Positions 52,069 through 52,108 of a stretch of 64,000 nucleotides of DNA are shown piece by piece. The stretch spans positions 40,982,001 to 41,046,000 of the forward strand of contig NC_043012.1 of NCBI RefSeq assembly GCF_006345805.1. The letters are read 5' to 3'. The position numbers were made by a program, and so were the translations under genes. This stretch comes from Octopus sinensis (Eukaryota). The notes below the pieces were generated by a model. That model saw only the letters and a program-made list of their open reading frames with translations, had not been told where the DNA came from and did no database searches. How positions within the stretch are numbered: the stretch's first letter is position 1; each line of letters begins with the position of its first letter.

Positions 52069-52108
52069 CCACTGAAGAGGTAAAATCTTACCGAAACACC
52101 GTGTATGG
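52069..52108 (+). ncRNA. Minimal type I hammerhead ribozyme motif, all core positions canonical
   Basis: CCA CTGAAGA GGTAA-AATC-TTACC GAAA CACCGTG TA TGG: 3-bp stem I, 5-bp stem II starting with G-C, stem III ACAC-C-GTGT, GUA site after 52105. Confidence 0.8.

What the first reader, a model, noticed from the sequence alone, without database searches (positions are those of the whole stretch)
52069..52108. Intact sense-strand hammerhead 2.3 kb upstream of the TRPC exon
Seen: every catalytic core position is canonical, stem II starts with G-C, stem III can close as a triloop or pair as a dimer, and the site is GUA. It lies in a ~460-bp segment between TG and CA tracts, on the same strand as TRPC. 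Inference: the best candidate for activity in this window. If TRPC has upstream exons, it would lie in the pre-mRNA and could cut it co-transcriptionally. The short stem I (3 bp) and lack of a nearby partner predict low monomer activity.
Basis: partly seen in the sequence, partly recalled or inferred. Interest (0 to 1): 0.72.

Follow-up and report, generated by a model that had tools for sequence, protein, structure and literature searches.

The report
Weak hammerhead look-alike upstream of TRPC
The letters of a minimal hammerhead ribozyme really are at this spot in octopus DNA, 2.3 kb before the first coding exon of a TRPC channel gene, but every test I could run says it is a weak look-alike, not a working self-cutting RNA, so the finding is ordinary.

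Summary
Window 52066-52111 (+) reads as a type I hammerhead with a canonical core, a G10.1-C11.1 pair, a 5-bp helix II, a 3-bp helix III with a triloop, a GUA site and a 3-bp helix I.

The window is Octopus vulgaris. The "TRPC exon" (54420-55556) is the first coding exon of a TRPC3-like gene.

The evidence for a working ribozyme is poor:
- **Rfam:** Hammerhead_1 scores 13.4 bits against a gathering score of 34.
- **Fold:** the hammerhead fold is 6-8 kcal/mol worse than competing folds in context, one of which pairs core bases G5-A9. Its predicted occupancy is 1e-5 to 4e-7.
- **Dimer:** the favoured homodimer buries the cleavage site.
- **Copies:** there is no second copy, tandem unit, Penelope-like element or retrozyme context.
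- **Ortholog:** O. bimaculoides keeps the core, but it has an uncompensated U·U in helix II and a 3-nt deletion in helix I. Its identity (92-93%) equals that of the 2.2-kb flank.

A motif this strict is rare per window (about 3e-4). About ten are still expected by chance per octopus genome.

Best reading: a non-functional look-alike, either fortuitous or a decayed transposon relic. Whether it is transcribed with TRPC is unknown. Interest is low.

The parts
52066..52071 (+). Helix I, 5' strand (CUUCCA). Only CCA (52069-52071) pairs contiguously next to the core.
   Evidence: The Rfam alignment shows 6 positions with one U·U mismatch.
52072..52078 (+). Core box CUGAAGA (C3-A9, N7 = A).
   Evidence: In O. 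bimaculoides it is CUGACGA.
52079..52092 (+). Helix II: GGUAA / UUACC with loop AAUC. G10.1-C11.1 is present.
   Evidence: O. bimaculoides has GGUUA, which gives an uncompensated U·U at 10.4-11.4.
52093..52095 (+). Core G12 A13 A14.
52096..52104 (+). Helix III: ACA-CCG-UGU (3 bp with a triloop). It is nearly palindromic (ACAC-C-GUGU).
52105..52105 (+). A17. The predicted scissile bond lies between 52105 and 52106 (site GUA).
52106..52111 (+). Helix I, 3' strand (UGGUGG, a tandem UGG). O. bimaculoides has a single UGG.
52065..52078 (+). Competing hairpin UCUUC-CACU-GAAGA, which pairs core G5-A9.
   Evidence: Minimum-free-energy folds of the 61-, 101-, 181- and 301-nt contexts.
52097..52110 (+). 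Self-complementary stretch CACCGUGUAUGGUG. It forms the predicted homodimer duplex. In cis it pairs with 52051-52061.
52041..54209 (.). Single-copy block that aligns with O. bimaculoides at 89.4% overall, about 92% outside the microsatellites. The motif sits at its 5' edge.
51765..51789 (.). (TG)n tract bounding the segment on the left.
52256..52345 (.). (CA)n tract bounding the segment on the right.
54420..55556 (+). First coding exon of the O. vulgaris TRPC3-like gene (residues 1-379). Splice donor CAG|GTAAAT at 55556/55557.

Best explanation
This is a hammerhead look-alike, not a working ribozyme. A 40-46-nt stretch of single-copy, apparently neutrally evolving DNA lies 2.3 kb upstream of the first coding exon of the Octopus vulgaris TRPC3-like gene. 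It happens to spell the 11 fixed core nucleotides plus three minimal helices. I take it to have arisen by chance. A short consensus of this kind is expected about ten times in a 2.7-Gb genome.

If the site is transcribed, the RNA is predicted to fold otherwise. A hairpin pairs G5-A9, and the helix III / helix I 3' strand pairs with an upstream complement. Self-cleavage should therefore be absent or negligible, and no effect on TRPC expression is expected.

Shown here: the motif, its weak score, the competing folds, the single-copy status, and the state of the ortholog. Inferred: that it has no function.
For: - **Rfam score.** There is no hit at gathering score in the window. Hammerhead_1 scores 13.4 bits against 34, with E = 0.78 in a 71-nt search. 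The ortholog scores 14.9 bits.
- **Fold of the motif alone.** The hammerhead structure is -1.8 kcal/mol against a minimum free energy of -5.4 for the 40-mer.
- **Fold in context.** In 61-301-nt contexts the best structure that contains the hammerhead pairs is 6-8 kcal/mol above the minimum. Its occupancy is 1.7e-5 to 1.9e-7.
- **Stability against shuffles.** Fold z-scores are -0.37, -0.82 and +0.72.
- **Dimer.** The predicted homodimer is a 14-bp self-duplex over the cleavage site.
- **Copies and context.** There is no second copy in the window or in 113 kb of O. bimaculoides. There is no tandem unit. There is no reverse transcriptase or endonuclease ORF.
- **Ortholog changes.** Of three differences, one is at the free position N7. 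One is an uncompensated helix II mismatch. One is a 3-nt deletion in the helix I 3' strand.
- **Ortholog fold.** The O. bimaculoides hammerhead fold is -0.1 to +2.1 kcal/mol against a minimum of -5.6.
- **Conservation.** Identity over the motif (0.92-0.93) equals the roughly 0.92 of the 2.2-kb block.
- **Chance rates.**
- **Background excess explained.** The apparent excess of CTGANGA..GAAA comes from k-mer bias plus one dispersed repeat family.
Against: - Under the strictest definition the motif is rare. That definition is a perfect core, G10.1-C11.1, A15.1-U16.1 and three helices. It gave 0 of 539 decoys and 0 in 59 Mb of simulation, so for this one window chance is about 3e-4.
- The layout resembles genuine metazoan type I hammerheads. 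Helix I has 6 positions followed by an internal loop and a possible 6-bp closing stem (52058-52063 with 52114-52119). Helix III is nearly palindromic, and 12 nt lie between G10.1 and C11.1.
- Cephalopod genomes do carry real Hammerhead_1 copies: 235 are reported in the giant squid (PMC6962438).
- The core survived in both octopus species.
- Nearest-neighbour energies ignore hammerhead tertiary contacts.
Confidence: 0.6

Rival explanations
1. It is a decayed solo relic of a transposon-borne type I hammerhead. The source would be a Penelope-like element pLTR min-HHR or a monomeric non-LTR retrozyme. It would have inserted before the O. vulgaris / O. bimaculoides split, possibly into a microsatellite, and would now be inert.
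For: - Most metazoan min-HHRs occur as single dispersed motifs attributed to truncated Penelope-like elements (PMC4209133).
- G10.1-C11.1 and a palindromic helix III are hallmarks of real motifs, and both are present here, the second only approximately.
- Penelope-like elements insert preferentially in microsatellites (PMC8557442), and the segment is flanked by (TG)n and (CA)n in both species.
- The strict motif is rarer than chance predicts for one window.
- The giant squid has 235 Hammerhead_1 loci and Penelope elements.
- The window holds other hammerhead-like motifs that share CCA(C)CUGAAGA...GAAAC...GUA(G)UGG and a min-HHR-like repeat family.
Against: - The motif lacks the unpaired base between A9 and G10.1 and the 6-8-bp helix II typical of these min-HHRs.
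- There is no reverse transcriptase or GIY-YIG remnant nearby.
- There is no related copy in 171 kb. That amount of sequence is far too small to exclude a family.
- The 217-nt segment shows no retrozyme-like stable fold (z = +0.66).
- A relic whose helices have decayed to 3 bp would rarely keep every core base.
Confidence: 0.28
2. It is a functional cis-acting hammerhead conserved in Octopus. It would be transcribed in sense within a TRPC 5'-UTR intron or an upstream transcript and would cleave it co-transcriptionally, perhaps slowly or with protein help, to tune expression.
For: - The core is intact in both species.
- It lies on the same strand as TRPC.
- An O. vulgaris gene model on the + strand spans the site.
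- There is a possible acceptor 59 nt before the ATG.
- An extended helix I with an internal loop is possible.
- Intronic hammerheads with a role in mRNA biogenesis are known in amniotes (PMC7229834).
Against: - Conservation does not exceed the flanks.
- The helix changes are not compensated.
- The fold occupancy is about 1e-5 or less, and the core is paired in a competing hairpin.
- The score is 13.4 bits against 34.
- No loop-loop contact is recognisable.
- There is no evidence of transcription.
- Animal retrozyme hammerheads are reported to be excluded from introns and exons (abstract of bioRxiv 10.64898/2026.07.22.740005).
Confidence: 0.06

Closest known systems
Type I hammerhead ribozyme (Rfam RF00163 Hammerhead_1, clan CL00010)
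   Same: The core is identical (CUGANGA / GAA / A15.1-U16.1 / H17). The topology is type I, with helices II and III closed and helix I open. G10.1-C11.1 is present and helix III is short and nearly palindromic.
   Different: It scores 13.4 bits against a gathering score of 34. Helix I has only 3 contiguous pairs and differs from the consensus uccag/cugga. No loop1-loop2 contact is recognisable. The fold is not thermodynamically favoured.
Minimal hammerheads of Penelope-like elements (Cervera & de la Pena 2014, PMC4209133)
   Same: It is a dispersed single motif with a short helix I, G10.1-C11.1 and a palindrome-like helix III. A monomer is expected to be inactive.
   Different: There is no bulged base after A9. 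Helix II is 5 bp, not 6-8. There is no pLTR or RT-EN context and no family of copies in the sequence available.
Metazoan non-LTR retrozymes (Cervera & de la Pena 2020, PMC7229834)
   Same: It is a type I motif in low-GC non-coding DNA of a mollusc.
   Different: It is not in a 170-400-bp tandem repeat. It is single-copy. The segment has no stable fold.
Conserved intronic hammerheads of amniotes (Rfam HH9 / HH10)
   Same: It is in sense orientation near or within a host gene.
   Different: Those are conserved well above their flanks and have stable helices and tertiary loops. This one is no better conserved than its flanks, and its position in an intron is unproven.

Membership tests
Hammerhead ribozyme, type I (RF00163) | Canonical catalytic core: C3 U4 G5 A6 N7 G8 A9, G12 A13 A14, A15.1-U16.1, and H17 not G. 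| tested here: met
   Direct reading and the descriptor scan.
Hammerhead ribozyme, type I (RF00163) | Three helices around the core, with helices II and III closed and helix I open. | tested here: met
   Helix I is 3 bp (6 positions with a U·U and a G·U). Helix II is 5 bp. Helix III is 3 bp with a triloop. This is the minimum possible.
Hammerhead ribozyme, type I (RF00163) | Covariance-model score at or above the curated gathering score (34 bits). | tested here: not met
   No hit at gathering score. The score is 13.4 bits in O. vulgaris and 14.9 bits in O. bimaculoides.
Hammerhead ribozyme, type I (RF00163) | The hammerhead secondary structure is the favoured, or at least an accessible, fold of the transcript. 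| tested here: not met
   It is 3.6 kcal/mol above the minimum free energy for the 40-mer and 6-8 kcal/mol above it in context. Occupancy is 9e-4 for the 40-mer and falls to 1.9e-7 in context. A competing hairpin pairs G5-A9. Caveat: the energy model ignores tertiary contacts.
Hammerhead ribozyme, type I (RF00163) | Loop 1 - loop 2 tertiary contacts needed for activity at physiological Mg. | not testable with these tools
   Loop 2 is AAUC. Helix I has a U·U and a possible 2x2 internal loop. No 3D or motif test is available here.
Hammerhead ribozyme, type I (RF00163) | Helices are kept through compensatory changes among homologs. | tested here: inconclusive
   Only one ortholog is available. 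The single helix substitution (10.4 A/U) is uncompensated, and a 3-nt indel alters helix I. Two species at about 8% divergence give little power.
Hammerhead ribozyme, type I (RF00163) | Site-specific self-cleavage. | not testable with these tools
   This needs an in vitro transcription assay.
Penelope-like element min-HHR | Sits in a pLTR that flanks an RT / GIY-YIG ORF, or belongs to a genomic family of such motifs. | tested here: not met
   The window has no reverse transcriptase or endonuclease ORF. There are no related copies in 171 kb. Family membership genome-wide could not be tested.
Penelope-like element min-HHR | An unpaired nucleotide between A9 and G10.1, with a long helix II (6-8 bp). 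| tested here: not met
   A9 is followed directly by G10.1, and helix II is 5 bp. The criteria come from PMC4209133.
Penelope-like element min-HHR | G10.1-C11.1 together with a palindromic helix III. | tested here: met
   G52079-C52092 is present. ACAC-C-GUGU is palindromic apart from one central C.
Metazoan non-LTR retrozyme | Head-to-tail repeats of about 170-400 bp, each carrying the hammerhead. | tested here: not met
   TRF and the repeat search find only microsatellites. Self-BLAST finds no second copy.
Conserved intronic hammerhead (HH9/HH10-like) | Conservation clearly above that of the flanking intron or intergenic sequence. | tested here: not met
   Sliding identity is 0.92-0.93 at the motif against about 0.92 across 52041-54209.
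Conserved intronic hammerhead (HH9/HH10-like) | Lies within the host gene's primary transcript, in sense. | tested here: inconclusive
   The exon at 54420 holds Met1, and no UTR data are available. An O. vulgaris + strand gene model spans the site. O. bimaculoides has no such model.

The most novel reading that the evidence does not exclude
An Octopus-conserved type I hammerhead sits in sense orientation in a 5'-UTR intron or upstream transcript of a TRPC channel gene. It cleaves the nascent RNA, slowly or with help from chaperones. That would make it a cephalopod counterpart of the amniote intronic hammerheads, and the first ribozyme tied to ion-channel gene expression in a mollusc.
Probability: 0.05. 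Interest if true: 0.6.

Novelty: not a real feature. Interest (0 to 1): 0.14.

Why it matters
If it were active, it would add a host-gene-embedded hammerhead outside vertebrates and give a direct handle on co-transcriptional RNA cleavage in cephalopod neural genes. As it stands, its value is cautionary. In AT-rich, repeat-rich octopus DNA a perfect hammerhead core with three minimal helices is expected about ten times per genome by chance. It cannot be called a ribozyme without a model score, fold support, conservation above background or a repeat-family context.

Tried and rejected
1. **Rfam at gathering score and with permissive E-values.** No qualifying hammerhead. It shows only at 13.4 bits when 71 nt are searched alone.
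2. **Partner copy or repeat family.** I used self-BLAST, TRF, the repeat finder and BLAST against O. bimaculoides loci. Nothing turned up.
3. **Transposon proteins nearby.** I checked ORFs of at least 130 aa and ran Pfam on 10 local ORFs. Nothing turned up.
4. **Retrozyme-like stable fold.** I folded the 217-nt and 466-nt segments. They are no more stable than shuffles.
5. **Double-hammerhead dimer.** It cannot be written as a nested structure, so its energy could not be evaluated. Cofold instead predicts a 14-bp self-duplex.
6. **Exact-protein look-ups.** The window ORFs and P0012 were not on record. The O. vulgaris gene is too long for its DNA to be returned.
7. **L001.** It turned out to be the 3' end of the O. 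bimaculoides gene and was of no use here.
8. **Excess of CTGANGA..GAAA (14 against 2.6).** I considered it a sign of a hammerhead family. I rejected that, because permuted-core decoys show k-mer bias (80 CTGANGA against a mean of 45; observed/expected 2.1 against 1.14 ± 0.42). One dispersed repeat and duplicated hits account for the rest.
9. **Search trick.** To pass the length filter of the protein search I appended the tail of a gastropod TRPC (P0006) to the window's exon. Only residues 200-379, which belong to the window, were scored.
10. **More distant octopods.** None are reachable. The 90% cluster holds only O. vulgaris and O. bimaculoides.

Full report
**What is there**

The + strand at 52066-52111 reads CUUCCA CUGAAGA GGUAA-AAUC-UUACC GAA ACA-CCG-UGU A UGGUGG.
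- All core positions are canonical: C3-A9 at 52072-52078, G12-A14 at 52093-52095, A15.1-U16.1 and A17.
- Helix II opens with G10.1-C11.1 and has 5 bp.
- Helix III is 3 bp with a CCG triloop and is nearly palindromic (ACAC-C-GUGU).
- The site is GUA, with the scissile bond between 52105 and 52106.
- Helix I has three contiguous pairs (CCA/UGG).
- The segment lies between (TG)n 51765-51789 and (CA)n 52256-52345.

An independent descriptor scan recovers the motif. The Rfam alignment extends helix I to six positions, with one U·U and one G·U.

**Where it is**

The ORF at 54420-55604 encodes ankyrin repeats and the start of the TRP_2 domain. It matches molluscan TRPC channels at 57-67% identity. 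Gastropod homologs align only to 55101-55556, and through their own N-terminal residues. A length-adjusted search returned Octopus vulgaris "short transient receptor potential channel 3-like". Residues 1-379 of its three isoforms are 100% identical to 54420-55556.

The window is therefore O. vulgaris. The exon is the first coding exon, with Met1 at 54420 and donor CAG|GTAAAT at 55556/7. The motif lies 2312 nt upstream on the same strand. It can be part of TRPC pre-mRNA only if a non-coding exon lies further upstream.

Two unverified hints point that way:
- A pyrimidine tract plus CAG at 54348-54361 could be a splice acceptor.
- The O. vulgaris annotation has a + strand gene model (145-aa product) whose range ends about 606 nt before the ATG and begins more than 9 kb upstream. 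The O. bimaculoides annotation has no such model.

**Is it more than chance?**

The answer depends on how strict the definition is.
- **Loose definition (helices I>=3, II>=5, III>=3).** 12 of 1000 dinucleotide shuffles of the window contain such a motif. 22 of 539 decoy cores, made by permuting the same letters, score a hit in 171 kb of real octopus DNA.
- **Adding A15.1-U16.1.** This leaves 5 of 539 decoys.
- **Adding G10.1-C11.1.** This leaves none, and none in 59 Mb of simulated sequence.
- **Extrapolation (mine).** About 3e-4 per 64-kb window, or about 10-20 per genome of roughly 2.7 Gb. The genome size is from my own knowledge.
- **Caveat.** The criteria were chosen after seeing the motif, so these figures flatter it.
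- **Rfam's scale.** The match is unremarkable. Hammerhead_1 scores 13.4 bits against a gathering score of 34, with E = 0.78 for 71 nt against 4227 families. Scaled linearly (my inference), that is about 0.17 such hits per 64-kb window for this family alone.

The 14-versus-2.6 excess of CTGANGA..GAAA is not evidence of a hammerhead family. CTGANGA is simply a common heptamer here (80 occurrences against a decoy mean of 45). The observed/expected ratio of 2.1 lies within the decoy range (1.14 ± 0.42, maximum 2.6). Several hits are duplicates or belong to one dispersed repeat.

**Can it fold and cut?**

- **Motif alone.** The hammerhead structure is worth -1.8 kcal/mol for the 40-mer, against a minimum free energy of -5.4.
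- **In context.** In 61-301-nt contexts the best structure that keeps all hammerhead pairs is 6-8 kcal/mol above the minimum. Its predicted occupancy is 1.7e-5 to 1.9e-7.
- **Competing folds.** The winners are a hairpin, UCUUC (52065-52069) with GAAGA (52074-52078), which pairs core G5-A9. A second helix joins CACCGUGU...GG to the upstream complement at 52051-52061.
- **Stability.** None of the folds is more stable than shuffled sequence (z = -0.37, -0.82, +0.72).
- **Dimer route.** This does not rescue it. No second copy exists in cis. In trans, the predicted homodimer is a 14-bp self-duplex over 52097-52110 that buries the scissile bond.
- **Caveat.** Nearest-neighbour energies ignore hammerhead tertiary contacts, so weak cleavage at high Mg in vitro cannot be excluded.

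The literature agrees with this picture. Metazoan type I motifs with weak helix III cleave poorly as monomers. Penelope-type minimal motifs showed no detectable monomer cleavage and only low activity as dimers (PMC4209133; PMC7229834).

**Context**

- The 466-bp segment has no other copy in the window.
- The motif-bearing block (52041 onward) has no paralogous copy in 113 kb of O. bimaculoides DNA.
- There is no 170-400-bp tandem unit.
- No ORF in the window or near the motif shows a reverse transcriptase or endonuclease.
- The 217-nt unique segment has no retrozyme-like stable fold (z = +0.66).
- A sub-threshold tRNA-like sequence lies on the opposite strand at 51931-51998 (22.1 bits against 29; none by ARAGORN). 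It is not part of the motif.

**Comparative test**

The O. bimaculoides TRPC locus was retrieved as L002. Window 52041-54209 aligns to L002 7614-9768 at 89.4%. The orthologous motif is CCA CUGACGA GGUUA-AAUC-UUACC GAA ACACCGUGU A UGG. The core is kept. The three differences are:
- N7 A/C, which is a free position.
- 10.4 A/U, which gives an uncompensated U·U in the middle of helix II.
- A 3-nt UGG indel in the 3' strand of helix I.

The O. bimaculoides version folds even less well as a hammerhead (-0.1 to +2.1 kcal/mol against a minimum of -5.6). It scores 14.9 bits.

Identity over the motif (0.92-0.93) is the same as across the whole 2.2-kb block (about 0.92). Survival of the core over this short divergence is therefore what neutrality predicts. 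By my arithmetic, 0.92^13 is about 0.34.

An assembly gap in O. bimaculoides starts just upstream of the motif, so the left boundary cannot be compared. No more distant octopod was reachable.

**Interpretation**

- **Most likely (about 0.6).** A fortuitous, non-functional hammerhead look-alike in single-copy DNA upstream of TRPC.
- **Real alternative (about 0.28).** An old, inert relic of a transposon-borne hammerhead. Four things favour it. Most such motifs in animals are solo copies. G10.1-C11.1 and a palindrome-like helix III are typical of true ones. Penelope-like elements favour microsatellites. Cephalopods do carry Hammerhead_1 loci. Against it are the missing post-A9 bulge, the short helix II, the lack of any element remnant, and the oddity of a perfect core beside eroded helices. 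Only a whole-genome copy search can settle chance against relic.
- **Unlikely (about 0.06).** A functional ribozyme acting on a TRPC or upstream transcript.

**Verdict**

The finding is ordinary and of low interest.

Noticed in passing
window 18595-18935 (motifs at 18690-18728 minus and 18797-18835 plus): A 341-bp near-perfect palindrome (arms 96.8% identical) carries a hammerhead-like motif on each strand: CCAC|CUGAAGA|UUGUC-GAUCAA-GACAA|GAA|AC-GAUU-GU|A|GUGG. It has U10.1-A11.1 in place of G-C, and helix III is only 2 bp. Its helix I and site signature, CCA(C)...GUA(G)UGG, resembles that of the studied motif. As RNA it would form one long hairpin, and Rfam gives only sub-threshold miRNA-like hits. 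The arrangement recalls the opposite-strand min-HHR pairs and inverted Penelope-like copies described in the literature, but a loose hit like this is within chance (0.36 expected per window).
   Followed up: partly
window 22420-22560 (-), window 11790-11930 (-), L002 63290-63430 (-): A dispersed repeat family contains CUGAAGAG-[short hairpin]-CGAAACGU, which looks like a minimal hammerhead with an ACGU helix III. In most copies G8/A9 fall inside the hairpin or two extra bases precede GAAA. The L002 copy has a mutated core (UCGAAGA). This family inflates counts of hammerhead half-motifs in octopus DNA.
   Followed up: partly
window 51931-51998 (-): A tRNA-like sequence scores 22.1 bits, below the tRNA gathering score of 29, and ARAGORN does not call it. 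It may be the head of a tRNA-derived SINE or a tRNA pseudogene whose tail would be the (TG)n/(TA)n tract at 51745-51789. It is not repeated in the 171 kb at hand. It cannot be compared with O. bimaculoides because of an assembly gap.
   Followed up: partly
window about 44420-53814 (+), from the O. vulgaris annotation GCA_951406725.2: A + strand gene model with a 145-aa product ends about 606 nt before the TRPC start codon and begins more than 9.4 kb upstream, so its range covers the motif. O. bimaculoides has no such model. It might represent misannotated TRPC 5'-UTR exons or a spurious ORF. Its protein could not be retrieved.
   Followed up: no
window 54348-54361: A pyrimidine tract plus CAG (ctctttaccttcag) lies 59 nt before the ATG at 54420. 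It is a plausible 3' splice acceptor, which would imply an upstream non-coding TRPC exon. O. bimaculoides has Ns at this position.
   Followed up: no
window 54420-55100; L002 10001-10680: The TRPC3-like protein begins with a low-complexity extension of about 230 residues, rich in Pro, Ser, Thr and Ala, that gastropod homologs lack. The whole first coding exon (residues 1-379) is 96% identical between the two octopus species.
   Followed up: no
L001 and L002 (O. bimaculoides CM046615.1:3864513-3972018): O. bimaculoides annotates this TRPC gene as two separate models, 774 aa and a 202-aa 'uncharacterized protein'. O. vulgaris has single isoforms of 1106-1136 aa spanning about 218 kb. The O. bimaculoides gene is probably split by annotation.
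   Followed up: no
window 44392-45189, 47260-47590, 48066-48350, 53449-53519: A high-copy SINE-like repeat of about 100-150 bp, at 70-88% identity, has more than ten copies in the 91-kb O. bimaculoides locus, in both orientations.
   Followed up: no
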